Assembly: GCF_006345805.1 (NCBI RefSeq)
Contig: NC_043001.1
Coordinates: forward strand, 18,166,001 to 18,230,000
DNA: 64,000 bases
Reading direction: 5' to 3'
Origin: Octopus sinensis
Taxonomy: Eukaryota
Shown here: positions 4,521 through 56,291 of the stretch, one piece after another
How the letters are laid out: each line of letters begins with the position of its first letter
How positions within the stretch are numbered: position 1 is the first letter of the stretch
The notes under the pieces: generated by a model
The model's database searches: none
What the model saw: only the letters and a program-made list of their open reading frames with translations
Told to the model about the DNA's origin: nothing
Translations under genes and position numbers: made by a program

Positions 4521-5252
4521 GTGATTATAATAGTATTTTTTTTTATAGTAAATGATCTTAACATTCTTTTTACTTTACATAAAATATTCTTTACATTCTA
4601 CTGTTGTTTTATTGCCATCTATTTACAAGTATTATAAATTTCATAGGTGAAATATTTTTCTGGGAACAAATTATGATCGCCAGCCTCGTCTGGCACCTGT
4701 GTCGGTGACACATAAGAAATCACCATCCGAGCGTAGCCGTCTGCCAGCCTCGTCTGGCACCTGTGTCGGTGGCACATAAAAAACACCATCCGAGCGTGGC
4801 CGTCTGCCAGCCTCATCTGGCACCTGTGTCGGTGGCACATAAAATCACCCACTACACTCTCGGAGTGGTTGGCGTTAGGAAGGGCATCCAGCTGTAGAAA
4901 CACTGCCAGATCTGACTGGCCTGGTGCAGCCTTCGGGCTTGCCAGACCCCAGTTGAACCGTCCAACCCATGCTAGCATGGAAAGCGGACGTTAAACGATG
5001 ATGATGATGATGATGATGATGATTGCTACTATGGGAAATTATTGCTCTGCTTTACAAATTTTCACTTTACGAGCGGCCTCTGGGAACAAATTAGCTCGTA
5101 TATCACACACACACACACACACACACACACATTTACATACAGTTTCTCCGATGTGGGGGGCATGTTAGGTTCAACAGATATCTAGGACTAGACTCTGATC
5201 TTTGACATTTCATTAGTTATATGTACTTTTTCGTGTATGAAACTTCAATTAA

Positions 5253-7910: not shown

Positions 7911-8235
7911 CGAGGGGCGTTCAATAAGTAATGCCCTGACCCACTTCCCATAGCAGTAGAGCAACGAAACTTGGCACAGTTATTAGTCTTTTTCTACATA
8001 GGAACCACCCAGAGTTACGCATTTCTCCCATCGTTTGATGCGGCTCTGGAGACCGTTTTTGTAGAAGACCCCAGCTTGGTCCTCCAACCTCAACGTGACT
8101 TCAGAAATCAAGGCTGCATCATCTGGGAAACGCTTTCCTTTCAAAAACAACTTCATGATTGGGAAGAGGTGAAAATCAGAGGGTGCAAGGTCAGGAAAGT
8201 ATTCTGTCTGTCTTTTTTCCCAAACTACTAAGTTA
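7911..8235 (-). mobile_element. Mariner transposon 3' fragment (transposase C-terminus plus TIR)
   Basis: Minus-strand YFPDLAPSDFHLF...RIKRWEKCVTLGGSYVEKD* carries the mariner YSPDLAPSD motif; TA followed by TIR CGAGGGGCGTTCAATAAGTAA at 7909. Confidence 0.85.
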
Positions 8236-10604
8236 CAGGACTGCACTGGTTGTCAGGCGGTGATGAAGATAAACAAACAAACACACAGACACACGTATAC
8301 ATGTATTTATATACACAACGGGCTCTTTTCAGTTTCTGTCTACCAAACCTATTCACAAGGCTTTGGTCAGTCCATGGTGCTGCACTGCGGGACTGAACCC
8401 ACAACCATGTGGTTGGAAAGCAAACTTCTTATTTTTTGACTGCCCACAAGGGGCTACACACGGAAGGGACAAACAAGGACAGACAAACGGATTAAGTCGA
8501 TTATGTTGATCCCAGTGCATAACTGGTACTCAATTTATCGAACCCGAAAAAATGAAAGGCGAAGTTGACCTCGGCGGAATTTGAACGCAGAACGTAACGG
8601 CAGACGAAATACCTATTTCTTTACTATGCACAAGGGGCTAAACACAGAGGGGACAAACAAGGACAGACAAATGGATTAAGTCAATTATATCGACCCCAGT
8701 GCGTAACTGGTACTTATTTAATCGAACCCAAAAAAATGAAAGGCAAAGTTGACCTCGGTGGAATTTGAACTCAGAACGTAGCGGCAGACAAACTACCACT
8801 AAGCATTTCGCCCAGCATGCTAATGATTCTGCCAGCTCGCCGCCTTCTCACCACACAGCCACACATGTTTGCAAACCACCTAGAGAACCACTTCATTGTT
8901 TGTATAGTCTGCTAGAAATAGCACCTAAATTCCCTTCAAACTAATGCAGGCACGGGTGACTTTTACAAGAAGTGGGCTGCATGAGATATGGCTCACTATC
9001 AAGCAGGCTGCACTGCCAAAATAATTCAGGGTGATGATTTTTATTAGACATGCCGTTCAGCAAGGCTCATAGGCCATGGATTGCCCATGGTTGCTTCAGT
9101 GTCATCGTCATCATCATCATCGTTTTAGTGTCCACTTTTACATCTTTGGATAAATCAGACAAAATTTGTTGAGGCAAATTTTCTGCAGCTGGACGCTCTT
9201 TTTGTCACCGACCCTCACCATTTTCCAAGTAAAAATGGTATTGTTTTCAAATTTTGGCAACCAGGGAGCAGATAAGTCGATTACATCGCCCACAGTGCAT
9301 GACTGGTACTTATTTTATTCTCTCTCCCCCCTCACTGAAATCACTGTAGTCCTTGACAGAATATGGACGAAATGCTATTAAACGTTTTGCCCAGCATGCT
9401 AATGATTCTGCCAGCTTGCTGCCTTCGAGTAAGGTAATATTTCATCTTGGCCAGATCTGTTTCCATGGAAACGGCACTGCTTGCGTGATAGCATCTCTCA
9501 CTCACAATTATCATGTGATGTGAAAACAAGGGGATATGCACACACGCACACACACACACGTGTGTGTATTTGTATCTCCTTGTCTTCACATCAAAGAAAC
9601 CCTATACGCACACATGCATGTTTGTGTGTGTGTGTGTGTGTGTGTATAATAGGTTTCTTTCAGTTTCCATCTACCAAATCCTCTCACAAGGTTTGGGGTC
9701 AGCCTGGGGCTATATGAAAAAAGAAAAAAGAAAAGCACTTGCCCAAGATACCACAGAGTGGAACTGAACCCGAAACCATGGGGCTGGGAAGTGAACATCT
9801 GAACCACACACCCATGCTTGCGTCTAGCATCTTTAAAAAAAAACCGGAAGAATGAAGTTAATATATTTCTACATAGAGTGTATCTGAGAGAAGACAGAAT
9901 AGTCAATTACTGGATCTTAGCTCTGCTTGTTCTGTACTAGCAACCATCTAAACCAGTGATTCTCAACTAGGGTTCGTATGGCCCCTTGAGGACCTTATAA
10001 AATTTTGTTAAAATATTTTCAGTTTTTTTTTTTTTTTTTAATATGGTATTAGGGGCAGGCATAGCTGTGTGGTAAGAAGCTTGCTTCCCAACCACATGGT
10101 TCCGGGTTCAGTCCCACTGCGTGGCACCTTGGGCAAGTGTCTTCTACTATAGTCTCAGGCTAACCAAAGCCTTGTGAGTGGATTTGGTAGATGGAAACTG
10201 AAAGAAGCTCATATATATATATATATCTTTTACTTGTTTCAGTAATTTGACTGTGGCCATGCTGGAGCACTGCCTTTAGTCGAGCAAATTGACCCCAGGA
10301 CTTTGTAAGCCTAGTACTTTATCTATCGGTCTCTTTTGCTGAACCGCTAAGTTATGGGGATGTAAACACACCAGCATCAGTTGTCAAGCAATGTTGGGGG
10401 GACAAACACAGATATATACACACACACATACATATATATGACGGGCTTCTTTCAATTTCCATCTATCAAATCCACTCACAGGGCTTTGGTCAGCCCAAGG
10501 CTATAGTAGAAGACACTTGCCCATGGTTCCACGCATGGGACTGAACTCAGAACCATGTCATTGGTAAACAAGCTACATACCACAAAGCCACTCCTGCACC
10601 TATA

Positions 10605-16810: not shown

Positions 16811-16986
16811 ATTCTCAACAAAGAAAGCCTATCTGGTCACCTGCAAAAACCAAAAGCCATGAAAGCTCTAAGACCAAAGACAACATAAGTGATTCTGACA
16901 CAACAAACAAAGAACAAACCATGCAGACACCAGATTCAGAATCCCACATTGAGCTTCGAAGGGGACGTAGTGCACGATCAGTACAG
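16811..16986 (+). CDS. First recognisable coding exon (A) of the homeodomain/TFII-I/chromodomain gene: (D)SQQRKPIWSPAKTKSHESSKTKDNISDSDTTNKEQTMQTPDSESHIELRRGRSARSVQ, a disordered S/K/T-rich segment
   Basis: Polypyrimidine tract ending TTTTTTACAG at 16810; CAG|GTCAGT donor at 16987; open frame; phase 1 to 0, matching the next exon. Confidence 0.75.
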
Positions 16987-19900
16987 GTCAGTATATAAAT
17001 TTTAGCCTCTTAAATTCTTTATATAGCTCTTTCGCTTGTTTCAATCATTGGACTGCAGCCTTGGGCAAGTTTACTCTTTTACTTGTTTCAGTCATTTGAC
17101 TGTGGCCATGCTGGAGCACCACCTTTAGTCGAGCAAATCGACCCCAGGACTTATTCTTTGTAAGCCTAGTACTTATTCTAGCGGTCTCTTTTGCCGAACC
17201 GCTAGGTTACGGGGATGTAAACACACCAGCATCGGTTGTCAAGCAATGTTGGGGGGGACAAACACAGACACACAAACATATATACACTCACACACAAGAT
17301 GGGCTTCTTTCAGTTTCCGTCTACCAAATCCACTCACAAGGCTTTGGTCGGCTCAAGGCTTTCGTAGAAGACACTTGCCCAAGATGCCACGCAGTGGGAC
17401 TGAACTCGGAACCAAGTGGTTCGTAAGCAAACTGCTTACCACACAGCCATGCATCATTTCAAAAAGTTGAATTGTTCTCAACATTTTAATTCTTCTACCT
17501 GCTCATTCATGGTCCATGTTTTCAAAGTTTGGTGTGCTGCAGGTGTTTGTTTCATTCTCTATGTCATTTTCATTCTTTTTTTTTCTTGTGTGTGTTTGTC
17601 TTACAAATTTCTTGGTGACCTCGCTGGTGCTGGTGCCATGTAAAAAGTATCCACTTCACTCTGTAAAATGGTTAGCATTTGGAAGGGAATTCAGCTGTAA
17701 AAGCCATGCCAAAACAGATCCCACCAATGCTGGTCCCTTGTAAAATGTACCCAGTCTAATCTGTAAATTAGTTGGTATTAGGTGGGGCATCCACCCATAA
17801 AGCCTATGCCAAAACAGTGGAGCTTGGTACAGTTCTCTGGCTTGCCAACTCCTGTCAAACCATCCAAATAAAATAAATAATGTGCCCTTTTAAAGCCTAG
17901 CCAGGCTCATGGGCCCAGTTTCAGTGGTGTATGTGTTCCCCAGCTGGACAGGACGCCAGTCCATCGCAGTGTTACTCATTCTTGCCAGCTGAATGGACTG
18001 GAGCAACGTGAAATGAAGTGTTTTACTCAAGAACACACCACGTTGCCCGGTCCAGGAATCGAAACCACAATCTTACGATCATGATGCTGACACCCTAACC
18101 ACTAAGCCACATGCCTCCACTCAAGCCATCCAAACCATGCCAGTATGGAAGACGGACATTAGATGATGATGTTTATCTCATAGGTTGGGTGGTTTTATTG
18201 TTTATGTAGTTCTTTCTTACAATTGAATGTCTTTCCTACTAGATATGACTCAGCTGGGAATCAATGAGTGGAACTTGGTTTTTATTAGTCTGGCAAAATG
18301 GACAGATTTGGGTCCTTTTCTTCAAGGACTCAACGCAACAACAGTAATTAGATCACAACTTATTAGCTTATTATTCAGCACCTTGACCAAAAATCATTGT
18401 GCTCTTTTGTTTCATCATCGTTTAACGTCTGCTTTCCATGCTGTCATGGGTTGGACAGTTTGAGGATTGGCAAGCCAAGAGACTGCACCAGGCTCCAATC
18501 TAATCTGGCAAGATTTCTACAGCTGGATGTCCTTCCCAACGCCAACCACTCTGAGAGTATAGTGGTGCTTTTTACGTGCCACCAGCACAGGAGCCAGTCA
18601 GGTGGCACTGGCATCAACGACGCTCAAATAGTGCTTTTTACATGCCACTGGTACGAGAGCCAGTCTGGTAGGACTGGTATCAACCATGCTTGAATGGTGC
18701 TTTTTACGTACCACTCAGGCGGTACTGGCATCAGCCACAACAATGATTTCACTTGACTCAACAGGTCTTCTCAAGCCCTGTTTATTGTCCAATGTTTGAA
18801 GATACTCTTAAATGGGCCGGTTATGCAACACTGGCATAGGCCATGGTTACGGTCTCACTTGGCTTGCCAAGTCTTCTCAAGCGCAGCATATCTCCAAAGG
18901 TCTCAGTCACTTGTCATTGTCTCTGTGAGGCCCAACGTTTGTTTCAAATAATAAAAATTCATATTGGAACAAAGAAAATGGGTAATGTTCTAGAGGTCTG
19001 TAAGTGTTTTGAGACTGCAACAAATAGCCAGGTCATAGTGCTAGTCTGCAATAAATGCCAACTGATCCGGACAAGCATGGAAAACTAAACATTAAAACAA
19101 TGATGGGATGTCATTAAGCAAGAGAGGTGTTGATATACCCTCTGGTAGGGAATTAGTTTGTCCCATAAAAACCTTCTCGGGAAATTTTGGTGCCTGCTCT
19201 TCATAGTCAGCAATTTGCAGCATAGTGAATTAATTGTCTGTTCACAGGAAATGCCATGATATATCTGCAGAAGATTATGAACTCAAGAAGTTTGAAGTCA
19301 CAATCAGATAACTTAATAAAACTGCTGAAGTCAAATTCGATGACTGGTATCCATGCTAGTGGAGTGCTAAGAGTACCGTACAAGCGTGATCGTTTCCAGA
19401 ACAACAAGCTAGCATCTGTGCTGGTGGCACGTAAAAAGCACCATTCGAGCGAGGTCATTGCCAGTGCCGCTGGACTGGCTCCTGTGCAGGTGGCACATAA
19501 AAAGGACCTTTTGAGTGTGGCCATTGCTAGTACCGCCTAACTGGCCCTTATGCTGGTGGCACGTAAAAGCACCCACTACACTCTCGGAGTGGTTGGCAGT
19601 AGGAAGGGCATCCAGCTGTAGAAACTCTGCCAGGTCAGATTGGAGTCTGGTGCAGCCATCTGGTTCGCCAGACCTCAGTCAAATCGTCCAACCCATGCTA
19701 GCATGGAGAGCGGATGTCAAACGATGATGATGATGAACATAGCTTTCAGAGTTAACCTCTAATTGAATCAGATGTGCTAACGTTTCTTGGAAGAATTCAG
19801 GAGTTTGTAGCTTTTACTTTAACTCCATGGTTGCTTTGATTATGTGGACCTATGATCAAAAGTATTTTAGCCATCCCCTCCCAGGAATAAGATACTCTAG

Positions 19901-20232: not shown

Positions 20233-20403
20233 AATAACTCTGTTGATCAAAGGCCTATTCGCAGATGTTCGGAATTCAATGACACACAGCTGGCCTTTCT
20301 AGAGTCACAATGGCAACTAGGAATGGTGTCCGTGTCCCGTGACTGTTGGAAGATGATTGACGATACTGCTGAATGTATTGGAATTTCATCAGCTCGAGTA
20401 AAA
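20233..20403 (+). CDS. Exon B: helices 1-2 and start of helix 3 of an HDX-type divergent homeodomain (NNSVDQRPIRRCSEFNDTQLAFLESQWQLGMVSVSRDCWKMIDDTAECIGISSARVK)
   Basis: TCTTTACAG acceptor and AAA|GTAAGT donor, phase 0 to 0. The F-x-D-x-x-L-A-x-L-x3-W-x2-G-M-x-S-x4-C-x3-I-x3-A pattern matches the HDX homeodomain as I recall it. The intron falls at the common homeobox position just before the helix-3 xW. Confidence 0.85.
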
Positions 20404-21685
20404 GTAAGTTGCATTGCTATTATTATTATTTTTTTTTTTTTTTTTCCTTTCTTCAAATTTTCTTCCGTTTCTTGCCGAGTGTTTTCCGTACACCTAGGGC
20501 AGAGAAGCTCATTGTATGCATTCCCAGATTACACACACAAATTCACCAATAAAATATGTATTTAAAAATAAATAAATAAATAAATTCATGGATGGTTGTT
20601 GTTTTCACAGCAATAATGCCCTTTTCAGTACATGAGCTGTTCCAGTTATTATTATTATTACTACTACTACTACTATTATTATTATTATTATTATTACTAT
20701 TATGTGTCGGTGGCACATAAAAAACACCATCCGAGCGTGGCCATTCGCCAGCCTCGTGTGGCACATAAAAAGCACCCACTACACTCACAGAGTGGTTGGC
20801 GTTAGGAAGAGCATCCAGCTGTAGAAACACTGCCAGATCTGACTTGATTGAGTAATCTGAATGCTAAAGGGTTAAGCCACTAACATTTAAACTGGCCATA
20901 TCCAACCCAAATATTCTACTTGGTTTATGCTCTTACTAGCCACATCTGGCCGCTCACCTACTTTACAATGTCATTCTAAAAATAAGCAATCACGTCATTG
21001 AAATCTCAAAGCAATGAGTTAATGCATGATTGGTGCCATGTAAAAGGTATTTGTGCTGGTGCCACATAGAAGAAAGCACCCAGTACACTCTGTAAAGTGG
21101 TTTGGCATTAAGAAGGGCATCCAGCCATAGGAATCATGCCAAAACAGATAGCTGGTGCCCAGTGCAGCTCCCAGCCATACCAATTCGTCAAACCATCTGG
21201 CCCATACCAACATGGAAAACGGATATTGATGATGGTGATGATGACAACGAATAAATATGCATTACATTTCACAGAGTTATTGTTTAACGTCTGCTTTCCA
21301 TGCTAGCATTGGTTGAACAATTTGACTGAGGTCTGATGAACCAGATGGCTGCACCAGACTCCAATCTGATCTGGCAGAGTTTCTACAGCTGGATGCCCTT
21401 CCTAACGCCTACCACTCCGAGAGTGTAGTGGGTGCTTTTACGTGCCACCGGCACGAGGGCCAGTCCAGCAGTACTGGCAGCGGCCACGCTCAAATAATCT
21501 AAATACTAAAGCATTTAAGATATATTTAAGTTAAAACCTTTTTTTCATAATTTTATGCCAAAAATCTTATTGTGTTCCAGACACTGGCTTTTAACTGAAA
21601 ATTACTTTACTAAATTACGGAGATATACTTGCATAGCAAGTGACCTGATCTGAGACTATGTGCTGAAACAAAAACAGTTGCAGTA

Positions 21686-21945
21686 TGGAAGGTGTTTATA
21701 AGCCATTTAAAAGCACACAAAAACCATTAGATTCACTTCAACATTTAAATTCAATTTGTCAAAATATATTCATCGCTTTGAGACCCTGACTTGTTCACTG
21801 ACAAAATTCTGTGCTGCATGGAATTTTATCAGTGAACAGGTTGTAGTCTCAAAGCAACAAAAATATTTTGAGAAATTAAATTTAAATTTTGAAGTGAATC
21901 TAACGGGTTTTGTGTGTTTTTAAATGGCTTATAAACACCTTCCAC
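21686..21945. repeat. Inverted repeat with arms of about 125 bp; a single-arm relative lies at about 36302-36510
   Basis: TGGAAGGTGTTTATA...AAAATTC and GAATTTT...TATAAACACCTTCCA arms around an 11-nt spacer. Confidence 0.7.
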
Positions 21946-22079
21946 AATGCTATTTGTTTACTTTACTAAAACTTACCAAAATCTTAATTTTACTTCTTTT
22001 TTTTTTTTAAGTACAATGGTAGTTGTTTTTCATTTTAATCACAAATGGTTTAATGTAAAATCTTACTGTCTTCTTTTTA

Positions 22080-22644
22080 TTGGGTTGTCCAGAAAGTTTG
22101 TGCCGATTTATAGCAGCTTACCTTTCGACTTATTTTAGAACATGGTTGAGTCCGTAAAATTGAATTTGACTACACCTCCATTTAGAGCACAGTTTAAGCT
22201 AACTTTTTGTGGAAGAAGGTTTATGTTCCTATAACCTGTCTTAATTCTGTAACCCTTTAAAATGGAAAATAAGAAAGTTCATTTTCGGCACTTGATGCTT
22301 TGGGAACCAGACAAAAATTGCTGCAGCTCAGCTGGGATGTGTTACCTCACCCTCCATATTCACCAGATATGCTCCTTCGGATTTCCACTTATTCAGGTCT
22401 CTGCAGAATAGTCTTTATGGTAAAAATTCCAATTCCTTAGATGACATAAATAGACATCTTCATGAATTCTTTGCCATGAAACCACCTCAATTCTGGGAAG
22501 CGGGTATTTTCAAGTTAAAGGATAGATGGAGACGCATTGTGCAACAAAATGGTTCATATTTGGTTGATTTAAAATGTAATGGCAAGTATTTATTGACCTT
22601 TTTATTTCCTTTAAAAATTGGCACAAACTTTCCGGACAACCCAG
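22080..22644 (+). mobile_element. Internally deleted mariner with both 30-bp TIRs and TA TSD
   Basis: TA|TTGGGTTGTCCAGAAAGTTTGTGCCGATTT ... AAATTGGCACAAACTTTCCGGACAACCCAG|TA. The N-terminal MENKKVHFRHLMLW is joined directly to the C-terminal WDVLPHPPYSPD/APSDFHLF...RWRRIVQQNGSYLVD. Confidence 0.9.
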
Positions 22645-23352
22645 TATTATACTACTAATCCTTCTGCCAGCAAATACTAAGAAAAATGATTAAATAAAAA
22701 GGAAACACTAAAGTTCTATTAATTTCTTCTCTTGTTACTTCTTTACTTTCATCTCTATTTCTTTTCTACCCTTTTCCTTTTTTGCTCTTGTTAGCCCCAT
22801 GTAAGCCCCTTGTAAGAACTGATAGAGCAGAACTATAACCAAATGTATTCTAGTCACTGTTACCTTTTTTATTCCGAAAACAATTAGAACTACATTTCCC
22901 AAGTGTCCTTTTTCTTTTCCTTTCTTCAAAGGGTGTATGATACAAAGCAGATTTGACTGCTATTTCTAACATGTTGAATGACCACATAGAAACAGCTGCA
23001 TTGGATTTACAAAAACTGTTTCTCTCTCTCCCTCTCTCTCTCTCCCTCACCCTCTCTCTCTCTCCCTCACCCTCTCTCTCTCTCCCTCCCCCTCTCTCTC
23101 CTTCTCCCTATCTCTCTCTCCCTCTCTTTTTCTCTCTCTCCCTCTCCTCCAACTCTTTATTCTGTACTATTTAAAATATTCAAATTCTCAAAGCATATTT
23201 CCATAAATATTACTTTCATCTCTCACACACTCTCAGATTTGCAACTTTGGCATACACACACACACATTGTCTAAATGTCCAGCTCTGTTTTAAATCATTT
23301 CTCCACTCTTCCAAGAATAAAACTTATTGTTTTTTTTACCCAATTTTTCTAG

Positions 23353-23446
23353 CGGTGGATCCAAGAATACAGCAAAGCTCATGGTTTAGTCATAGATGAA
23401 CCTGTCACTAGAAAACGTAAATTATCAGAATCCAGAAATACAGATG
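23353..23446 (+). CDS. Exon C: remainder of homeodomain helix 3 plus a basic NLS-like motif (RWIQEYSKAHGLVIDEPVTRKRKLSESRNTD)
   Basis: TTTTTCTAG acceptor and ATG|GTTTGT donor, phase 0 to 1. Supplies the invariant helix-3 Trp in register with exon B (RVK|RW). Not in the ORF track. Confidence 0.8.
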
Positions 23447-25424: not shown

Positions 25425-25609
25425 ATTTTGGTTCCGATACTGGAGGTGAAGAAAATGAAGAACTTGAGAGTGCGGCGAAAAAGAGTAAGAAAAGTCCATC
25501 TAGAAGCAAGACCAAAGAAAACAGAGAGACGACGGACAAAAAAGAGACTAACCGGAACCAGAACAAGCGTGAACAAATTGTGGGGTTACTGGGGAAACTC
25601 AGCCACACT
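25425..25609 (+). CDS. Exon D: acidic/basic linker and start of a TFII-I-type leucine zipper (...NKREQIVGLLGKLSHT)
   Basis: CATTTTATAG acceptor and ACT|GTAAGA donor, phase 1 to 0. The C-terminal EQIVGLLGKLSHT resembles the DEIITSLVSALDSM segment of GTF2IRD1 (recalled). Confidence 0.8.
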
Positions 25610-27319: not shown

Positions 27320-27461
27320 TGTTCATCATTGTCATCTCTTGGTGTTGAAACTGCCTGTCTAGCTGTCAACAAACCAGTTGTTTTCACACTAGGTAGTAAA
27401 TATGGTACAAACTTCCTTAAAAAAGAAAAGCAATTACAGAACAAATTTCTTGCCTACTTAG
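27320..27461 (+). CDS. Exon E: TFII-I family N-terminal leucine-zipper/dimerisation region (CSSLSSLGVETACLAVNKPVVFTLGSKYGTNFLKKEKQLQNKFLAYL)
   Basis: TATTTTTAG acceptor and TAG|GTTGGT donor, phase 0 to 1, 142 nt. Aligns without gaps over 47 aa to GTF2IRD1 [47 protein letters not shown] (recalled), with 20 identities by hand. Confidence 0.85.
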
Positions 27462-28357: not shown

Positions 28358-28435
28358 CCAAGGGCAAAGATCAGCCCAAAAACAATCGTAAGAAGCTTGC
28401 AGAAGAAGTGAAGGCCTTATTCAATGAGAAGTTTT
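28358..28435 (+). CDS. Exon F: start of a GTF2I (I-) repeat (AKGKDQPKNNRKKLAEEVKALFNEKF)
   Basis: TTCGTTTCAG acceptor and TTT|GTGAGT donor, phase 1 to 1. LAEEVKALFNEKF matches the I-repeat first helix (LRKQVEELFNEKY). Confidence 0.85.
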
Positions 28436-29099
28436 GTGAGTCCATTTTCATAACACTTTATTTCAGATTTATAAAAGAGTCACATACACACATTCAAATT
28501 ACATCTTATCATTTGGATGGTGGGGAGAAGGAAACATTCCGTGATGTTGCACTGATGTAGAGGCTCCTTCTTTAGTTATGAACTGTGACTCTGATTACCA
28601 GAAGAGATCATATTTGTTAACTTGGTGCTGGAGTCCTTAACCCTTTTGATACCAACCTGCCTGAAACCGCCGCTGGCTCTGTAGTACAAATGTCCTGTTT
28701 TCATAAGTTTTGAATTAAAATCTTCCACCAAACCTTAGTCACAATTTATGTTCCTAATACTAGCTGAATGATAACTAAGTTATTTTACTAAATTCTTTGT
28801 TATATTTAAAATTAATTGAAAGAAACACAGAGCATCTCAACAGAAATACAGTAAAAAAAGGGTTAAAGCAGTCTAGTGAATTCCCAGTATTGCTCTGACG
28901 ACTCCTGCATCTCAACACGGATACCATATCCTTTCTTTAGATTACATCAGTGTTGAAGAGAGTATGAACCTATTTCGGTTTTCATTTAGGCATATTGGGT
29001 CATTTGATAGTAAAGTATGCTTATATTGTATTATTCTACAAGGCTGCATTACTAGTAATCACTAAAATACCTATTGAAGGCTTAGCGAGCCTTCAATAT

Positions 29100-29468
29100 T
29101 GCAGAATCACCTCCCTCCGACAAGTCACCCTAACGTGACGTCTGCGTTAGCTGGGTCATGCCCTCCGTTGTTAGCCAGGAGAATTCATCTACGAAGCAAT
29201 TGCCCCAGCTCCCCTTCAGGGTTGGCGAAAGCGATGTGGTGGACAACGAAAAACCTGGCTGATGACAGTCAAGGCTGATCTGGAACCTAACCTAGGTCCC
29301 CATATCTACGGCGTTCGCCGCTGGAATAAGGAGTGGTTGGAGATCACGCGGTCGTTAGCCTCAAATTGCCAGGCCTTGTCGGCGTTTGTGAGAGATGCAG
29401 CATTGAGGATGTATGAAGCCAGCTCAACCCACCCCGGGTGCATGCTGTCTCAAGTCAAGTCAAGTCAA
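29100..29468 (+). mobile_element. RTE-clade LINE 3' end fragment with a (CAAGT)n tail
   Basis: Translates to (R)WLGHALRC*...GWRKRCGGQRKTWLMTVKADLEP...RRWNKEWL...SAFVRDA, then TCAAGTCAAGTCAAGTCAA. Confidence 0.7.
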
Positions 29469-29668
29469 AATACCTATTAGATTTGGTGGGTGGGATCCAG
29501 TTTTAAAAGAGAAAACGTTAAAAATATTTTGGAAGGAAAAATAGCTCCATTTGAAATTTCTGATCTTGGTTTTTGTATTTACTGAAATTGGTTCACCTTC
29601 ATATTAATTGCTGGTTTCCTTCAACTGTATTTACACACCCAATAATCTTGGCAATATTCAACTTTTAA

Positions 29669-29978
29669 CCCCTTACCCAACAATTATTTTGAAAAATAAA
29701 TGTATTTTTTCAGACATATTTTTTAATTGTTTTATTTTACTATGTTTTGAATGGTGATTTCGAGGTATATTTCAAACCTTATTTATTATGAATTTTAATT
29801 CAATAATATTGATTTTAAATTACCGCTTTGGGCAGAAACGAGTTAACCCGTTTTTAGACGAAGGAACTCGTTTGCTGACGGTTTTGGCGAGTCTATCTTT
29901 TGACGAGTTAACTCGCCAGAGATAGAAAAAAAACGATTTCGGTCAAAACGCATATATTCGTTTCTGCCGGGTAAGGGG
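29669..29978. mobile_element. piggyBac-type MITE (TTAA TSD, CCCCTTACCC TIR)
   Basis: TTAA|CCCCTTACCC ... GGGTAAGGGG|TTAA. Confidence 0.7.
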
Positions 29979-30069
29979 TTAAAACTGTTAATCTTCCACT
30001 TTCACTCTTCTCTTTATCTATATATCTATCTATTCTGCTCACTTATTTTCTTCTCCTTTTTGCTACCAG

Positions 30070-30247
30070 CTTTATGTTGCGGCAGTACTCGGACCATGCC
30101 ATATGTTAAACTGGAAAAAGATCCTATGTTTATCGACATTGAAGGCTTCCCGGATGGCATTATCCTAAAAAGACCACAGTCCTATGGAATATCGGATCTT
30201 CGGAAAATTTTAAATGCTTCTGAAAAAATCCAGTTTCACCTAAAGAA
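30070..30247 (+). CDS. Exon G: body of the GTF2I (I-) repeat (SLCCGSTRTMPYVKLEKDPMFIDIEGFPDGIILKRPQSYGISDLRKILNASEKIQFHLK)
   Basis: Long pyrimidine tract then CTACCAG acceptor; GAA|GTAAGT donor; phase 1 to 2. PY-x8-I-EG-x-P-x-GI-x3-RP-x2-YGI-x2-L-x2-IL-x5-I-x-F matches the I-repeat signature (VPY...[26 protein letters not shown]...IRFVIK). Confidence 0.9.
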
Positions 30248-32532: not shown

Positions 32533-32666
32533 TCCACAGCCAAACAAAAAGAAAGTCACTTCTAACCCGACGCCAAAGAAAGAAAATACGAGTACAGAAT
32601 CCACAGAGAACAATTTACCGCCTCCTACTTTACCTGCTCAGTCCAATGACACACAACCTAATAAAG
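32533..32666 (+). CDS. Exon H: P/T/S/K-rich disordered linker (NPQPNKKKVTSNPTPKKENTSTESTENNLPPPTLPAQSNDTQPNK)
   Basis: TTTGTTTGTTCAG acceptor and AAG|GTGAGA donor; phase 2 to 1, which bridges exons G and I exactly. Confidence 0.75.
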
Positions 32667-33726
32667 GTGAGAACTTTCAAACAGTACCTAACATAGCTTT
32701 TTTGCATTCCCTTGTTTGATCACCCAAAGCCGATAATGAGTGTGTGTGTATTTGTTCTCCATCACTGCTTAGCAACTAATGTTGGTGTGTTTGGGTGCCC
32801 CATAACTTAGTGGCTTCACAAAAGAGACTGATAAAATACATACCAGGTTTAAAAAAGTTGAGTACTTTGGTCAATTCATTCAACAGAAATCCCTCATGGC
32901 CATCATCATCACCATCATCATCATCATCATCATTATCATCGTTTAACGTCTGCTTTCCATGCTAGCATGGGTTGGACGTATGACTGAGGGCTGGTGAACC
33001 AGACTCCAATCTAATCTGGCAGAGTTTCTACAGCTGGATGCCCTTCCTAACGCCAACCACTCCAAGAGTGTAGTGGGTGCATTTACATGCCGCCAGTCAG
33101 GTGGCACTGGCAATGACCTCGCTCAAATGTTTTACACATGCCACCGGCGCGGGTGCCAGTAAGGCGATGCTGGTAACGATCACGCTCGAATGGTGTCTTT
33201 TACGTGTCACCGGCACGGAGGCCAGATAGCCACTCTGGCAACAATCACGCTCGGATGGTGCTTTTGGCACCCTACTAGCACGTATTGCTTTAATATCTCT
33301 AAATGTTTCATTTTATTCCTTAGTTTGGTCAATACTTTCCTCTTTGTAGTCTGACCCTTAGATAGAATAGAAATTTGTAGTCAACCTGATCCTTTTATTT
33401 TCTTTCCTCTATTTTTTTTTATCTATACATTTTGTATTTTGATTAATTGTATCTTGTCCGTCACTATATCTGTGGTTTTAGTTTTGTCTGTGAAAAGCTG
33501 GGAATGACACACCACTCTGGGTATATGTGACCAAACTGAGTGAAATTGTGAAAGGATCTAATCAAGAACTTATTTGAACAATCTCCTGAGGAGGCACATT
33601 CTACACCTTTGTTGTAAAATAATGAATATGCAACATCTCACCTATATATGACAGGTGTATGAATGCATTGAAACAATTGTAGTGATTTTAAATTCCATTG
33701 TTAATTTCATTTTCTTTGATTTGTCC

Positions 33727-34036
33727 ATATATATATATAAAATACAAAATGGGACAAGAACGCAAAACATCCGGACAACTAGGTGATACAAAAAGGGACA
33801 ACAAAACATCCAGATAGACGATACAAAAAAAACAAGGACAGGTCATTCGAAGTTTTCTATCTTCAGTCAAGAACCAGATTATCCTCGCAATTTCGGCTGA
33901 TTATTCTTGAGATTGCTCTAATCTGGACTTGTTTACTTGGTATCGTCTATCTGGATGTTTTGTTGTCCCTTTTTGTATCACCTAGTTGCCCAGATATTTT
34001 GCGTTCTTGTCCCATTTTGTATTTTATATATATATA
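33727..34036. mobile_element. (TA)n-flanked hairpin element with arms of about 95 bp and a CTGAAGA...CGAA motif in the loop
   Basis: Arms 33727-33824 and 33940-34036 are near-perfect reverse complements; minus strand 33845-33866 reads CTGAAGATAGAAAACTTCGAAT. Confidence 0.55.
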
Positions 34037-35279
34037 GCGCAGGAGTGGCTGTGTGGTAAGTAGCTTGCTTACCAACCACATGGCTCCAGGTTCAGTCCCA
34101 CTGTGTGTCACCTCGAGCAAATGTCTTCTACTGTAGCCTCAGGCAGACCAAAGCCTTGTGAGTGGATTTGGTAGACGGAAACTGAAAGAAGCTCGTCGTG
34201 TGGGTGTGTGTGCTTGTGTTTGTACCCCTACCATCAGTTGACAACTGATGCTGGTTTGGCAAAAGAGACCAATAGAATAAGTACTAGGCTTACAAAGAAT
34301 AAGTCCTGGTGCTCCAGCATGGCTGCAGTCAAATGACTGGAACAGGTAAAAGAATAAAAGAGTATATATGGACAAATCCAAGAAAATAGAATTATATATA
34401 TATATATATATATATATACATAAATTTATATAAATAAGGATAAGATCGCTAATTTAAAAATAAAATAACGATTTTATCAAGTGGTCAGCGTAGAAAAAAT
34501 AACCTTCAATGGTAATAATTATTAAAATTTATAAATTAGGGTATCTACAAGATACCACCATGCTGAAAATAGCAGCCATGATCTGACTCTAAAAACTAGT
34601 AATTTTTTACTAATTTCATCTTGTCTCTTTGTTTTCTCTCCATGTTGATATATGGACAATTTAGGTGGTTTTAGAGTCAGATCATGGCTGCTATTTTCAG
34701 CATGGTGGTATCTCATAGATACCCTAATTTATAATTTTTATATATATATACATATAGATAAATAGATATATATGCAGAGAGAGAGAGAGCATATTTCTTT
34801 TCCAACTATACCTACTTAACCACAACTAGCTGTATTTTTGTTTACACATATCATCCAATGTTTTGGAAAGATTAACATTATTTTGCTACATCGGAAAACT
34901 ACACAATTTCACTTTTTTTTCTTCAGAATCTGTAAAAATGATTAGTGATATCCTTAAACAAGGACTAGATTCTGTTGAGGGTGTAGACTGTTTTATACAC
35001 TTCTGTTTCATTGGGAATGCTACCAGCTCTTGTTAAATTGAATATCTTTGGAATCTCCATATAGCTTTTCCTTTTTGATAAATACATGTTCCTATTTCAT
35101 TCACAAATAGACCGAGGCTAACATTAACCCTTAACAACTCAATTTTTATGTGGAAAAAAGAAGAAATGTAGGTATAAAGAACCTTCTTATACTTTCTGAA
35201 AGGAAAAAGCATATGTTTGAACTTTTCTCAAAACTAAGGGTGTTGAGGTGTTGATGATATTTTTTGGTTTTTATTTCAG

Positions 35280-36116
35280 ACCTCCGAACAAAATCAGACA
35301 GTTTTGGTAATAGTGGCAACAAAAGGAATAATTCCACTCCTCCTCCACCTCAGCTTGAACCTGAACGTCCACAACTTGAGTTGAACATGGATTCAAAGAC
35401 TAAACCAGATCAAGTTCCAAAATTTGGTACAGTTGAGCCTCAGTTCTCAACGTTACCAAAAGCCTTTCAGACTTCAGGGAACACTCCAGGAAGTGAGTCT
35501 TTCTTACACAGTTCGTATATGACTACAAATTCAAACACGGGTTCCCAGGCACAAAACCCCAATAAATCCTTACAAATGAGACAAAGTGCTGCGTTTGGCA
35601 GCAAGCCCATTGTCACAAGCCCTGCATTCTTGCAGCACAGAACTACTTTCGGTTCTGGGAGCAGTCGCCGAAAAGCTCTAGAATTAGCACGCTCAGAGCA
35701 GAAAGCTCTGGAAGAGAAATCTAAAAAGGCTGTTGAGACACTGAAACCTGTTGAGCAGCCCAAGACTGATTTTCAGCAGAATTCGGACAGCAAGTCTGTG
35801 GCCAAATTTGACATCAGTTCAAGATCTGTTGAAGCTTCCAAATTTAAACCAATTGATTCAATGCAATTCAAACCTATGGAGAGCCCTAAGTTTAAGGGCA
35901 TAGAAATTGCTAAATTCAAACCTATAGAGAGTGCTAAATTCAAACCAATGGACAGTAAGTTTAAACCTGTAGAAACGACCAAATCTGACAAAAAATCTTC
36001 TGACAGTGTTCTTGTTGAAAAGAAAAAACCTGAAACACCAAAATCTCAAAAGAAAGAATCAGAAAACACAAAATCACAGAAGTCTAAAGATTCTGATGGC
36101 AAATCAGGAACTGAAA
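35280..36116 (+). CDS. Exon I: 837-nt disordered S/K/P-rich exon containing a short coiled-coil-like stretch (RRKALELARSEQKALEEK) and six KFKP-type repeats
   Basis: Longest non-repeat ORF in the window (35264-36130). TTTTTATTTCAG acceptor and AAA|GTAAGT donor, phase 1 to 1. Confidence 0.85.
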
Positions 36117-40477: not shown

Positions 40478-40866
40478 GCCGGCAGTTTGTTCCATACTTC
40501 AGCAACTCTTAGCGTGAAAAAATGTTTCCGAAAGTCATGGGGGCTGTGCTGTTTTCTGACTTTGTAACCATGCCCATGGGTGTTAGATAGGTGGAGTTTG
40601 AAAAGGTGCTCAGAGTTATTATTTGTAAGATGGTTAATAATTTTATGGGTGTCTACCAAGTCAGCTGCCAGATGTTAGAGTTTCAATGTATCTATGCCCA
40701 GGGAAGTAAGGCATTCAGAATATGCCTGATGGAGGGTATTCTCTTGGTTGCACGTTGCTGAACAGTTTCCAGATGATTAATATCCTGGGCAAGATAGGGG
40801 TTCCAGACCGGTGATGCAAATTCCAGGTGAGGCCACACCATAGCTATATAAAGCCTCAGATAGATA
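40478..40866 (-). mobile_element. CR1/L2-type LINE reverse transcriptase C-terminal remnant (frameshifted)
   Basis: LYIAMVWPHLEFASPVWNPYLAQDINHLETVQQRATKRIP...THGHGYKV...RKHFFTLRVAEVWNKLP. Confidence 0.85.
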
Positions 40867-41167
40867 GCCGGAGAGCAGCTCACAAAGGACTTGGTAATAA
40901 GTACTTCTGTAATAAGTACAGTCTGTGAAAATGTGATTAAGAACTCAATCGGGGCTAATGAATGTGTGGTAGACCTTATATTAATATATGTTTGAAGATG
41001 TTGACATTGTTGTTCTAAAAACTTATGAACGCTCTTGTTAGATTGCAGATAAACCATGGTGAGTATCACAAAACTTGCTACCCTCCTGCCTACTTTTCAT
41101 GCAACCACTTTGCTCTTTTAATTATTCAGGTTTCATAGAACTAAATTTGCTCACTTGTTCACACATA

Positions 41168-42933: not shown

Positions 42934-44728
42934 TGTTAGATTAAACGAATAGCCGATTGTCATCATCATCATCATCATTTAGCGTCCGTTTTCCATGCTA
43001 GCATGGGTTGGACGGTTCAACTGGGGTCTGTGAAGCCAGAAGGCTGCGCCAGGCCCAGTCTGATCTGGCAGTGTTTCTACGGCTGGATGCCCTTCCTAAC
43101 GCCAACCTCTCTGCGAGTGTAGTGGGTGCTTTTTACGTGCCACCTGCACAGGTGCCAGACGGAGCTGGCAAACGGCCACGAACAGATCGTGCTTTTACCT
43201 GCCACTGGCACGGGGTCCAGGCAGGGCTGGCAACGGACACGAACGGATGGTGCTTTTACGTGCCACCGGCACGAAGGCCAGTCGGGGCAGCGCTGGCAAC
43301 GGCCACAATCGGATGGTTTGCTTAAACCACAGCTGCAATTTCCATTGATGTTGATCGACTTCGATTTTGGTTCTGCTCTCTGATATCTGATTTGATTTGG
43401 TTTGATTGTGTATGTGTATTTCAAACCTGGGTTGGATGGTTCTACAAATTTTGATTTTTGCATAACCATTTAGATTATACAGGACAAATGGCTGGATCTG
43501 TAGAATTTCAGACAGAATAACTTGTGGTATTTCTCAGTTCAAATCCCATCATCCAGGTTCAGTTTCCTTTTAATCCTTTTAGTCAATAAAATAAGTACTG
43601 AAGGTCAATGAACTCAACTACAAGTTAGAAGCTGGTGCTCCTGTGTGGCCACAGTCCAGAGACTGGAAATGATTTTTTAAAAATACTGTTCATAGCACTA
43701 TCATAGGTGGATTATCCATATTTTCAGTGGGAATAGGCTACCTTGGATAGTCCAATCTACAGTACAATAAGGACAGATGTGCTAAACACAGACAATTATG
43801 GTTGAGCCTGTAGAGATGTTTGAAATCATAGAGTTCCAAAGGAAGGATTAAGAGCCAGGAGACAAGAAAAGCCCTTTGTAATATTTGTTGAATGTCAACA
43901 TCATCAGGAGTTAGATAATTCATACATTGTTGCAAGAATTGTTTAATATACCAAAAAAATCTTAACTTTTCCTCCTATCATTGTTTTTTAAATGAGAACC
44001 ACTTGTAATTTCAGAATTGTGTTCTCACAACCAAATTGGAGCGGCTGTGGCTTGGATGCCAATCGAACCCTCTAGAATTTTCCATTAGCTTCTTTCGTGT
44101 CTTGAGTCTGCTTCGTTAAAGCTAATCATCATCATCATCGTTTAACGTCCGCTTTCCATGCTAGCATGAGTTGGACGATTTGACTGAGGGCTGGCGAACC
44201 AGATGGCTGCACCAAGCTCCAGTTTTGATCTGGCAGAGTTTCTACAGCTGGATGCCCTTCCTAATGCCAACCACTCCGAGAGTGTAGTGGGTGCTTTTAC
44301 GTGCCACCGGCATGGGAACCAGTCGGGCGGTACTGGCAATGACCTCGGTCGAATCTTTTTACACATGCCACCAGCACAGGTGCCAGTAAGGTGATGCTGG
44401 TAACAATCACGCTCGAATGGTGCCCTTTTACATTCCACCGGCACGGAAGCCAAAAGCTATTTAACAACAACAATAGCAACAGAAATGATATCCTTATCAT
44501 TTTTATATTTAATGTCTGTATAATGGAATCCAAGATTCATGATATCTGCAGCGTGTCTCCTTCTCCCATTACAATTATTTTCTGTAGTCTTAGGATCTGG
44601 AACTCAAAGAAGAAGCTTACAAGCAGATGCAATTCAATGGTTGTTTATTTTAGTTCTCATTTGTGTGGCTCGTTCCCGGTGACAGCTCATGGTTCATTGT
44701 TCTGTTTTTGATTTGACGGTCATTCAGA

Positions 44729-56157: not shown

Positions 56158-56291
56158 GTGAGGTTTTTATTGTAGAGAAAGTCTTAAAGAAACGTGTGCA
56201 GAAAGGTCATCAAGAGGTTTTGGTCAAATGGAAAGGTTACAGCAATCGTTACAACTCATGGGAACCAGTGGACAACATTTTCACCATGTAA
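56158..56291 (+). CDS. Terminal exon J: Polycomb/CBX-like chromodomain (EVFIVEKVLKKRVQKGHQEVLVKWKGYSNRYNSWEPVDNIFTM*)
   Basis: Strong pyrimidine tract then TTTCCAG acceptor, phase 1; TAA stop at 56289-56291. Has the classic xF/YxVExI...LVKWKGY...NxWEP chromodomain motif. Too short for the ORF track. Confidence 0.85.

What the first reader, a model, noticed from the sequence alone, without database searches (positions are those of the whole stretch)
20233..23446. HDX-class homeodomain with the DNA-contacting helix-3 residues replaced (WIQEYS instead of WFxNRR)
Seen: from Phe8 to the helix-3 Trp there are 4 extra residues relative to a canonical 60-aa homeodomain, with GMxSxxxxC in the helix 1-2 loop. 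Helix 3 has Glu at position 51 and Ser at 53. Established: Asn51 and Arg53 are near-invariant DNA contacts, and the GM..S....C insertion is characteristic of HDX (recalled HD2: FSDRDLATLKKYWDNGMTSLGSVCREKIEAVATELNVDCEIVRTWIGNRRR). Inference: an HDX-lineage homeobox that has probably lost canonical TAAT binding and may act as a protein-interaction module.
Basis: partly seen in the sequence, partly recalled or inferred. Interest (0 to 1): 0.7.

Follow-up and report, generated by a model that had tools for sequence, protein, structure and literature searches.

The report
Divergent HDX-like homeodomain in octopus chromodomain protein
Two exons of an octopus gene encode a conserved three-helix domain that looks most like the homeodomains of the vertebrate HDX protein but lacks the usual DNA-reading residues, and it sits inside a large, functionally uncharacterised chromatin-type protein.

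Summary
Exon A (20233-20403) and exon B (23353-23446) are real, spliced coding exons. Together with eight other exons in the window they encode the C-terminal 709 residues, at 100% identity, of Octopus vulgaris CAI9722904.1 and O. sinensis XP_029636503.1 (LOC115211899). Decapod mRNA contigs show the same K|RWI junction.

The domain has the 4-residue helix 1-2 loop insertion (GMVSVSRDC) and helix 3 reads W48-I-Q-E51-Y-S53.

Among homeodomains its closest relatives are those of HDX:
- the only homeodomain hit in the PDB is 2DA4;
- hhalign P is 4e-8 against HDX, versus 0.025-0.49 against the PRD, ANTP and POU sets;
- both HDX homeodomains carry a phase-0 intron at the same position, 46/47.

It is not an HDX-type gene. 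The host protein has one such domain, followed by a GTF2I-like repeat and a C-terminal CBX-type chromodomain. Helix 3 is not decaying. W-I-x-[E/D]-Y-[S/G]-K-A-[H/N]-G is kept between octopus and decapods (dN/dS about 0.07). Locally it resembles transposase-type helix-turn-helix (HTH) domains.

Loss of canonical TAAT reading is a reasonable inference. A protein-interaction role is untested. I rate this a new variant of a known kind, of moderate interest.

The parts
16811..16986 (+). Upstream coding exon (…DSQQRKPIWSPAKTK…ELRRGRSARSVQ). It ends in phase 0 and joins exon A. The first roughly 556 residues of the protein lie upstream of the window.
   Evidence: tblastn of P0002/P0012/P0014 and exact splice reconstruction
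20233..20403 (+). Exon A. It encodes the basic N-terminal arm (RPIRRC), Phe8 (20275-20277), helix 1, the 4-residue-longer loop GMVSVSRDC (20317-20343), helix 2 and the start of helix 3 up to Lys46.
   Evidence: The orthologous exon in L001 has the same donor, and dN/dS is 0.16.
20404..23352 (+). Phase-0 intron between homeodomain codons 46 and 47 (2949 nt). It is filled with repeats: SINE-like copies, a hairpin with 149-nt arms, and an element with 35-nt terminal inverted repeats.
   Evidence: Both HDX homeodomains of a fish locus (L007) have an intron at the same position and phase.
23353..23446 (+). Exon B. It encodes R47 W48 I49 Q50 E51 Y52 S53 K54 A55 H56 G57, then LVIDEPV and the basic stretch TRKRKLS. 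It ends in phase 1.
25425..25609 (+). Exon encoding a charged linker (DFGSDTGGEENEE…KREQIVGLLGKLSHT). The phase fits exon B (G + AT = Asp).
27320..27461 (+). Exon encoding most of the best-conserved block of the protein (CSSLSSLGVETACLAVNKPVVFTLGSK…). No Pfam family matches it.
   Evidence: 95% amino-acid identity between octopus and decapod
28358..30247 (+). Two exons (28358-28435 and 30070-30247) that encode the GTF2I-like repeat.
   Evidence: Pfam PF02946, 54-57 bits against a cutoff of 27. PDB GTF2IRD1/TFII-I repeats, E 2e-11. Exon mapping.
32533..36116 (+). Two exons (32533-32666 and 35280-36116) that encode a long low-complexity region rich in Lys, Ser and Pro.
56158..56291 (+). Last exon. 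It encodes a CBX/HP1-type chromodomain (…EVFIVEKVLKKRVQKGHQEVLVKWKGYSNRYNSWEPVDNIFTM) and the stop codon.
   Evidence: Pfam PF00385, 44-45 bits. PDB CBX8/CBX5/CBX4/CBX2, E about 1e-10. Coordinates.

Best explanation
The two exons encode a single divergent, homeodomain-derived three-helix domain. It lies in a cephalopod nuclear protein (O. sinensis LOC115211899 / O. vulgaris CAI9722904.1) whose other recognisable modules are a GTF2I-like repeat and a C-terminal CBX-type chromodomain.

Shown: the domain shares with both HDX homeodomains the 4-residue loop insertion G-M-[TV]-[SN]-x4-C, the Ile/Val at position 49 and the phase-0 intron at 46/47. It most likely descends from an HDX-type homeodomain that became part of a multi-domain chromatin protein. 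Its recognition helix has been rebuilt from W-[IV]-G-N-[RK]-R-R to W-I-x-[E/D]-Y-[S/G]-K-A-[H/N]-G. The new motif is held by purifying selection across octopus and decapods.

Inferred: without Asn51 and Arg53, with an acidic residue at 51, with position 50 free to vary (Q, K, N) and with a net domain charge near zero, the domain cannot read TAAT in the canonical way. I think it most likely works as an accessory module of a chromatin reader or adaptor. The chromodomain would bind methyl-lysine and the GTF2I-like repeat would be the likelier sequence-specific DNA binder. The domain itself would act either as a partner-binding surface or as a low-specificity, non-canonical nucleic-acid contact, through its still basic arm (R3, R4) and helix 3 (R44, K46, R47, K54).
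For: Real, spliced and annotated:
- 709/709 identity to the octopus proteins.
- Decapod mRNA contigs carry the same junction.
- The representatives search returned full-length cephalopod orthologues at 92% and about 70% identity over the domain.

Constraint:
- pN is 0.12 and dN/dS about 0.07 for the domain, the same as the GTF2I-like repeat (pN 0.12). Linkers have pN 0.23-0.48.
- 28 columns of the domain alignment are invariant, including W48, I49, Y52, K54 and A55.

HDX affinity:
-.
- An HMM built only from HDX HD1 and HD2 finds exactly this site, and only this site, in four cephalopod proteins at 18-20 bits.
- The intron position and phase are identical at the DNA level.

Helix 3 is why the domain escapes annotation:
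- Pfam Homeodomain gives 27.4 bits for human HD2.
- It gives 20.8 bits for octopus exon A joined to the human helix 3.
- It gives 14.3 bits for the human N-terminal part joined to the octopus helix 3.
- It gives nothing for the native octopus domain.

Architecture.

Charge: net 0 to +2, against +4/+5 for HDX and up to +12 for canonical homeodomains.

Fold: three helices are predicted and helix 3 runs across the exon junction.
Against: - The HDX link rests on about 25-28% identity and one loop motif. In the 1.84-billion-protein library no HDX protein reached E 1e-3.
- Intron 46/47 is also typical of PRD-class homeoboxes (my knowledge), so it is not unique to HDX.
- The AlphaFold models are of low confidence (pLDDT about 60) and Foldseek gave no significant hit. 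The top two were an IS-type transposase HTH (2RN7) and 2DA4, E 0.7-0.8.
- The region from helix 2 to helix 3 scores better against bacterial HTH repeats than the whole domain does against HDX.
- Helix 3 keeps a net charge of +3/+4, so DNA or RNA binding is not excluded.
- No binding, expression or interaction data exist.
Confidence: 0.65

Rival explanations
1. The domain is still a sequence-specific DNA-binding HTH with a new specificity. The rebuilt helix 3 (S-A-R-V-K-R-W-I-x-E/D-Y…H-G) would dock like a transposase/IS3-type or paired-type HTH, using the N-terminal half of the recognition helix and the basic arm. In this reading the homeodomain changed its reading mode rather than losing DNA binding.
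For: - hhalign P is 4e-9 against bacterial HTH_23/HTH_Tnp_1-type repeats, over helix 2, the turn, helix 3 and the tail. The pattern A..[LI]GIS..[TR][VL]..W…Y…HG[ILV] is shared. The shuffled maximum was 20 against 46 observed.
- Pfam HTH_23 and HTH_28 are the only, sub-threshold, hits.
- Helix 3 has a net charge of +3/+4 and R3/R4 are conserved.
- The motif is strongly conserved.
Against: - The bacterial family was picked as the best of 1.8 billion sequences and scores through 4-5 repeats, so the match may be generic HTH resemblance or convergence.
- Position 50 varies (Q/K/N) among orthologues and the overall charge is about zero.
- All Pfam HTH hits are below their cutoffs.
Confidence: 0.25
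2. The domain is not of HDX or homeodomain descent at all. It would be a domesticated transposase-type HTH (HTH_23, HTH_28 or HTH_Tnp_1 like) whose helix 1 and loop resemble HDX by chance.
For: - Native Pfam hits are only to HTH_23 and HTH_28.
- The top Foldseek hit is the IS-element TnpE.
- The bacterial HTH repeats are the next-best hits in the large library.
Against: - The bacterial similarity covers only 29 columns. The N-terminal two thirds (Phe8, helix 1, the loop with G-M-x-S-x4-C, helix 2) align without gaps to HDX.
- That part scores 20.8 bits on Pfam Homeodomain once a canonical helix 3 is attached.
- The phase-0 intron at 46/47 is shared with both HDX homeodomains.
- HDX and canonical homeodomains themselves match the same bacterial repeats at P 3e-5 to 2e-4. 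The resemblance is therefore partly a general HTH property.
Confidence: 0.08
3. The exons are a gene-prediction artefact or a decaying pseudo-exon pair with no function.
For: None found. The database names are uninformative or spurious ('uncharacterized', 'ifkA-like', 'myb-like protein V').
Against: - mRNA-type contigs from 16 samples.
- Conserved splice sites.
- dN/dS of 0.07-0.16.
- An intact reading frame across 10 exons.
Confidence: 0.02

Closest known systems
HDX (highly divergent homeobox) homeodomains HD1 and HD2; structure 2DA4
   Same: - Atypical length, with 4 extra residues in the helix 1-2 loop.
- Loop motif G-M-[TV]-[SN]-x4-C.
- Trp or Tyr at position 20 and Ile or Val at position 49.
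- Phase-0 intron between codons 46 and 47.
- Best profile-profile and PDB match.
   Different: - HDX keeps W-[IV]-G-N-[RK]-R-R and passes Pfam Homeodomain, whereas the octopus domain has W-I-Q-E-Y-S-K and gets no Pfam hit.
- HDX has two homeodomains and, as far as the fish locus shows, no region similar to the rest of the octopus protein.
- The octopus protein has one such domain plus a GTF2I-like repeat and a chromodomain.
- Holland et al. 2007 (PMC2211742) list Hdx among families without invertebrate orthologues.
HOPX and other homeodomains that lack the DNA-contact residues (for example the CERS/Lass Hox-like domain) - from my own knowledge
   Same: A homeodomain fold is retained while Asn51 and Arg53-type contacts are lost. 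Function is thought to be through protein partners.
   Different: There is no detectable specific sequence relationship. HOPX is a stand-alone 73-residue protein, whereas here the domain is embedded in a 1265-residue multi-domain protein. This comparison is an analogy only and was not tested.
Transposase-type or 'homeodomain-like' HTH domains (Pfam HTH_23, HTH_28, HTH_Tnp_1; for example IS-element TnpE, 2RN7)
   Same: The pattern from the end of helix 2 through the turn, helix 3 and the tail, A..[LI]G[IV]S..[TR][VL]..W…Y…[HN]G[ILV]. These give sub-threshold Pfam hits and the top, non-significant, Foldseek hit.
   Different: The similarity covers only 29 columns. Helix 1 and the long loop do not match. 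All scores are below the family cutoffs. The domain also carries a homeobox-type intron.
TFII-I / GTF2IRD1 I-repeats and CBX/HP1 chromodomains (the host protein's other domains)
   Same: There are clear Pfam and PDB matches. The three aromatic-cage positions appear to be present (F, W, Y) when read by eye against HP1 and Polycomb from memory.
   Different: There is a single I-repeat rather than 5-6. The chromodomain sits at the extreme C-terminus and stops 7 residues after WEP, without the usual C-terminal helix. I do not recall having seen the combination with a homeodomain-like domain described, and I did not find it in the papers I searched.

Membership tests
Homeodomain (Pfam PF00046) | Score above the Pfam gathering threshold (22.9 bits) | tested here: not met
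   The native domain gets no PF00046 hit even at E<=10. The chimera of octopus exon A with the human HDX helix 3 reaches 20.8 bits. Human HD2 reaches 27.4 bits.
Homeodomain (Pfam PF00046) | Three-helix fold with core residues F8, L16, F/W/Y20, W48 and a hydrophobic residue at 49 | tested here: met
   F8, L16, W20, W48 and I49 are present and invariant in cephalopods. AlphaFold predicts three helices in the expected places, at low confidence (pLDDT about 60). Homeodomains give TM about 0.5 at 3.0-3.4 A over about 51 residues, but the Foldseek E-values are not significant.
Homeodomain (Pfam PF00046) | Asn51 and Arg53 (near-invariant DNA contacts) | tested here: not met
   Position 51 is E or D and position 53 is S or G in all five cephalopod sequences.
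HDX family | Atypical homeodomain with extra residues in the helix 1-2 loop carrying G-M-T-[SN]-x4-C | tested here: met
   The domain aligns without gaps to HD1 and HD2, and all canonical homeodomains need a 4-column gap. The octopus loop is G-M-V-S-VSRD-C.
HDX family | Phase-0 intron between homeodomain codons 46 and 47 | tested here: met
   Octopus: GTA AAA|gtaagt…ttctag|CGG TGG. Fish HD1: GTT AGA|gtaagc…tttcag|ACA TGG. Fish HD2: ATC AAG|gtcagg…ttccag|ACG TGG. All ten vertebrate HD2 exon ORFs I read (of 39 hits) end …[RK] followed by V (GTn). This intron is not exclusive to HDX, because PRD-class genes share it (my knowledge).
HDX family | Closer to HDX than to any other homeodomain class | tested here: met
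   hhalign P is 4e-8 (HD1+HD2) and 2.8e-7 (HD2), against 0.025 for PRD, 0.057 for ANTP-type and 0.49 for POU. The PDB-wide search hits only 2DA4 among homeodomains.
HDX family | Two homeodomains per protein and HDX-like sequence outside them (gene-level orthology) | tested here: not met
   Each cephalopod protein has a single HDX-like site. tblastn of the cephalopod proteins against a 20-kb fish HDX locus finds nothing beyond chance. The architecture is homeodomain-like domain, then GTF2I-like repeat, then chromodomain.
HDX family | Recognition helix W-[IV]-G-N-[RK]-R-R | tested here: not met
   Cephalopods have W-I-[QKN]-[ED]-Y-[SG]-K.
Transposase-type HTH (Pfam HTH_23 / HTH_28 / HTH_Tnp_1) | Score above the family gathering threshold over the whole domain | tested here: not met
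   HTH_23 gives 16-17 bits (cutoff 24.6) and HTH_28 14-15 bits (cutoff 25), matching only helix 2 to helix 3.
CBX/HP1-type chromodomain protein (host protein) | Pfam Chromo above threshold | tested here: met
   PF00385 gives 44-45 bits against a cutoff of 25.1. CBX8, CBX5, CBX4 and CBX2 match at E about 1e-10. Only profile positions 1-40 of 53 are matched, and the protein ends there.
GTF2I-repeat protein (host protein) | Pfam GTF2I-like repeat above threshold | tested here: met
   PF02946 gives 54-57 bits against a cutoff of 27, with one repeat. GTF2IRD1 repeat 2DZQ matches at E 2e-11.

The most novel reading that the evidence does not exclude
The HDX type of homeodomain is not a chordate invention. 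It would date back at least to the protostome-deuterostome ancestor. In cephalopods it was captured into a chromodomain plus GTF2I-repeat chromatin protein, and its recognition helix was rebuilt into a new, conserved, HTH_23-like reading surface (W-I-x-E/D-Y-S/G-K-A-H/N-G). That surface would give a new nucleic-acid or partner specificity. This would be a natural example of a homeodomain changing its recognition mode rather than simply dying.
Probability: 0.25. Interest if true: 0.6.

Novelty: new variant of a known kind. Interest (0 to 1): 0.45.

Why it matters
HDX is one of the least understood homeobox families. It is only tentatively attached to the POU class and is listed as lacking invertebrate orthologues (PMC2211742).

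A cephalopod domain that shares its peculiar loop and intron would push the origin of that domain type back. It would also give a second, independent context in which to study it.

The case shows as well that homeobox surveys based on Pfam can miss real homeodomain descendants when only helix 3 has changed. Here the native domain gets no hit, against 20.8 bits for the chimera.

Finally, the host protein combines a homeodomain-like domain, a GTF2I-like repeat and a chromodomain. It is an uncharacterised, strongly conserved cephalopod chromatin factor that may be worth functional study.

Tried and rejected
- **Word-index protein searches.** With the 88-residue domain and with a 373-column cephalopod profile they returned only one hit each, P0001 and P0003. 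They missed the annotated octopus proteins, so they say nothing about orthologues outside cephalopods.
- **HDX HD2 query.** It returned only exon-sized ORFs from vertebrate genomic contigs and no invertebrate HDX.
- **Second HDX-like domain.** I searched the window and the full-length proteins and found none.
- **Alternative exon supplying W-x-x-N-[RK]-R.** I scanned both strands of the window and found none downstream of exon A.
- **Gene-level similarity to HDX.** tblastn against a fish HDX locus found nothing.
- **Structure.** Two AlphaFold runs, one single-sequence and one with a 5-sequence alignment, stayed at pLDDT about 60. Foldseek against the PDB gave no significant match. Structure therefore cannot discriminate between homeodomain and transposase HTH.
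- **Transposon-like ORF fragments.** Pfam gave no hits for those in the introns.
- **Literature.** Four searches found no report of a mollusc or cephalopod Hdx, nor of this domain combination.
- **Exon swap.** I considered and rejected the idea that exon B was swapped in from a foreign HTH, because the HTH-type similarity spans the exon A/B junction.
Full report
**What is in the sequence.** The window is AT-rich, repeat-laden animal DNA. On the + strand, 20233-20403 is an open exon bounded by …ctttacag| and |gtaagt. 23353-23446 is a second exon bounded by a strong polypyrimidine acceptor (…tttttctag|) and |gtttgt. Joined in phase 0 they read NNSVDQRPIRRCSEFNDTQLAFLESQWQLGMVSVSRDCWKMIDDTAECIGISSARVK|RWIQEYSKAHGLVIDEPVTRKRKLSESRNTD. 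Phe8 to the helix-3 Trp is 44 residues rather than 40. The loop reads G-M-V-S-VSRD-C. Helix 3 is W48 I49 Q50 E51 Y52 S53.

**The exons and their junction are real.**
- A genomic contig from a cuttlefish-like species (L001) carries the orthologous exon A. Nucleotide similarity (82%) begins inside the exon and stops exactly at the shared AAA|GTAAGT donor.
- Differences fall 6/2/20 on codon positions 1/2/3, and dN/dS is 0.16.
- An exhaustive HMMER search of 1.84 billion cluster representatives with the 88-residue product returned full-length cephalopod proteins that contain exons A and B joined in this same way. These are O. bimaculoides XP_014770978.1 (92% identity), Acanthosepion pharaonis CAE1255533.1 and a decapod Logan protein (about 70%).
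- Ten exons in the window translate to the last 709 residues of O. vulgaris CAI9722904.1 and O. sinensis XP_029636503.1 with no mismatch. The exons are 16811-16986, 20233-20403, 23353-23446, 25425-25609, 27320-27461, 28358-28435, 30070-30247, 32533-32666, 35280-36116 and 56158-56291. The window therefore comes from one of these two species or a very near relative.
- In a decapod, an 889-codon uninterrupted ORF on 3.4-3.8-kb contigs found in 16 sequencing runs can only be spliced mRNA. It reads …ISPARVKRWIKDYGKANG….
- No other exon downstream of exon A in the window could supply W-x-x-N-[RK]-R.

**What the gene is.** Pfam finds no Homeodomain in these proteins. It does find a GTF2I-like repeat (54-57 bits, cutoff 27) and a chromodomain at the extreme C-terminus (44-45 bits). 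PDB sequence searches agree: GTF2IRD1/TFII-I repeats at E 2e-11 and CBX8/5/4/2 chromodomains at about 1e-10. Public names are uninformative or spurious ('uncharacterized protein', 'Chromo domain-containing protein', 'ifkA-like'). The finding is thus one unannotated domain inside a 1265-residue, low-complexity-rich nuclear-type protein. It is not a small homeobox gene.

**Is the domain HDX-like?**
- *PDB search.* Across all PDB sequences, the only homeodomain the octopus domain hits is human HDX (2DA4). E is 1.3e-3 with the single sequence and 0.017 with a five-sequence cephalopod profile. The alignment is gapless over 51-58 residues.
- *Profile comparison.* Profile-profile comparison gives 93% probability and P 2.8e-7 against vertebrate HD2, and 95% and P 4e-8 against HD1 plus HD2. 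The corresponding P values are 0.025 for PRD, 0.057 for ANTP-type, 0.49 for POU and 0.007 for all eight canonical homeodomains.
- *Shuffle control.* Column-shuffled versions of the cephalopod alignment scored 10.4 ± 2.1 (maximum 17.2 of 120), against 38.5 observed.
- *Reverse search.* An HMM made only from HDX HD1 and HD2 finds exactly this site, and no other, in four full-length cephalopod proteins.
- *Multiple alignment.* The cephalopod and HDX domains share the four extra loop residues, and every canonical homeodomain needs a gap there.
- *Gene structure.* The vertebrate HD2 exon ORFs I read all stop at …EI[VI][RK] followed by a GTn codon. In a fish HDX locus (L007) both homeodomains are interrupted by a phase-0 intron between codons 46 and 47. 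HD1 reads AGA|gtaagc…tttcag|ACA TGG and HD2 reads AAG|gtcagg…ttccag|ACG TGG. The octopus has the same arrangement, AAA|gtaagt…ttctag|CGG TGG.
- *Caveats.* Identity is only about 25-28%, and on residue scores alone En and Otx2 are not far behind. The 46/47 intron is also a PRD-class feature (my knowledge). No HDX protein reached E 1e-3 in the large library.
- *Conclusion.* I rate specific HDX affinity of the domain at about 0.7.

At the level of the gene, orthology with HDX is not supported. The protein has one domain instead of two. Nothing else in the protein resembles the fish HDX locus. The architecture is different.

**The replaced helix 3.**
- *Why Pfam misses the domain.* A Pfam chimera test shows where the signal is lost. 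Human HD2 scores 27.4 bits on PF00046. Octopus exon A joined to the human helix 3 scores 20.8. The human N-terminal part joined to the octopus helix 3 scores 14.3. The native octopus domain scores nothing. The N-terminal two thirds are therefore still recognisably homeodomain, and helix 3 is what hides the domain.
- *Not decay.* W-I-x-[E/D]-Y-[S/G]-K-A-[H/N]-G is shared by octopuses, cuttlefish, another decapod and even a divergent intronless copy. Between octopus and decapod the domain has pN 0.12 and dN/dS about 0.07. That equals the GTF2I-like repeat (pN 0.12) and is far below the linkers (0.23-0.48). Synonymous sites are saturated, so the ratios are rough.
- *Resemblance to bacterial HTH repeats.* The next-best hits in the large library were bacterial proteins made of HTH_23/HTH_Tnp_1-type repeats. 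A profile of their repeat units matches the end of helix 2, the turn, helix 3 and the tail of the cephalopod domain at P 4e-9 over 29 columns (…A.[LI]GIS..[TR][VL]..W…Y…HG[ILV]). The shuffled maximum was 20 against 46 observed.
- *How I read that resemblance.* HDX and canonical homeodomains match the same repeats at only 3e-5 to 2e-4. The bacterial family was selected from 1.8 billion sequences and scored through 4-5 repeats. The match does not extend to helix 1 or the loop. I read it as convergence on, or retention of, a generic HTH recognition-helix pattern rather than as evidence of transposase descent. It does, however, warn against assuming the helix is inert.

**How it most likely works.**
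- *Shown.* This is a conserved, expressed three-helix domain of HDX-like sequence without Asn51 and Arg53, embedded with a GTF2I-like repeat and a chromodomain.
- *Inferred.* Canonical TAAT reading is lost. Position 51 is acidic. Position 50 varies among orthologues (Q/K/N), which would be unusual for a specificity-determining residue. Net charge is 0 to +2, against +4/+5 for HDX and up to +12 for classical homeodomains.
- *Most likely role.* The protein would be a chromatin reader or adaptor. The chromodomain supplies methyl-lysine binding and the GTF2I-like repeat supplies DNA contacts. The homeodomain-like module acts either as a partner-binding surface or as a non-canonical, low-specificity nucleic-acid contact.
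- *Open point.* Helix 3 remains basic (+3/+4) and the arm keeps R3 and R4. A new DNA specificity therefore stays a live rival, at about 0.25.
- *Structure.* The predictions give three helices with helix 3 continuous across the exon junction. Confidence is low (pLDDT about 60). Foldseek found nothing significant. An IS-element TnpE and 2DA4 came top, followed by many homeodomains at about 3 Å over about 51 residues.

**Novelty and verdict.** The gene is already in public databases as an uncharacterised protein, but its homeodomain-like domain is not annotated. Holland et al. 2007 list Hdx among families without invertebrate orthologues and place it only tentatively in the POU class. I found no report of a mollusc Hdx or of this domain combination. 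Within the library searched, the domain was detectable only in cephalopods.

I class it as a new variant of a known kind: a homeodomain of HDX type with a rebuilt, conserved recognition helix in a new protein context. Interest is moderate at 0.45.

Noticed in passing
window 21666-21964: A near-perfect hairpin lies inside the A-B intron. Its arms are 149 nt each, 83% complementary and separated by 1 nt. It looks like a foldback or MITE-type element.
   Followed up: partly
window 22078-22646: A 569-bp element has 35-nt terminal inverted repeats (22078-22112 and 22612-22646, 89% complementary). It encloses an ORF fragment (22296-22655) with …PSDFHLFRSLQNSL.GK…, which I recall as the C-terminal motif of mariner transposases. 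A similar fragment lies at 7986-8252 on the - strand. Pfam gave no hit.
   Followed up: partly
window 20768-20847 and 21360-21439 (and many other places, e.g. 4622-4990, 19412-19678, 49722-50135): Copies of an abundant SINE-like repeat (…GGCACATAAAAAGCACCCACTACACTC…) occur in both orientations throughout the window. Two inverted copies, 90% complementary, sit in the A-B intron.
   Followed up: no
window 56158-56291: The chromodomain of the host protein ends 7 residues after the WEP motif (…WEPVDNIFTM, then stop). It therefore lacks the C-terminal helix of CBX/HP1 chromodomains. The same stop is conserved in the decapod mRNA (L002).
   Followed up: partly
window 25590-25609 + 27320-27461 + 28358-28375: A 65-residue block (REQIVGLLGKLSHTCSSLSSLGVETACLAVNKPVVFTLGSK…YLAKGK), just upstream of the GTF2I-like repeat, is the most conserved part of the protein. 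It is 95% identical between octopus and decapod (pN 0.03) but matches no Pfam family.
   Followed up: partly
L005 215-523 and L006 213-521 (Logan ERR12370324, ERR12370320): An isolated, intronless copy of the homeodomain-like domain alone (P0006) is 49% identical to the decapod domain. It is flanked by stop codons and has one extra loop residue, but keeps W-I-N-D-Y-S-K-A-N. It may be a retrocopy or a domain-only paralogue in another cephalopod.
   Followed up: partly
window 36117-56157: The last intron is 20 kb long. It carries several ORF fragments that look like LINE reverse-transcriptase remnants (40695-41096 -, 44717-44977 +, 51165-51626 -) and long TA/CA-type microsatellites. Pfam gave no hit for two of them.
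   Followed up: partly
L007 3490-3603, 6974-7000, 10043-10183, 12383-12409 (GCA_977065575.1): A compact fish HDX locus shows that both HDX homeodomains carry the same G-M-T-[SN]-x4-C loop and the same phase-0 intron at 46/47. This suggests that HD1 and HD2 arose by tandem duplication of an already split homeobox.
   Followed up: partly
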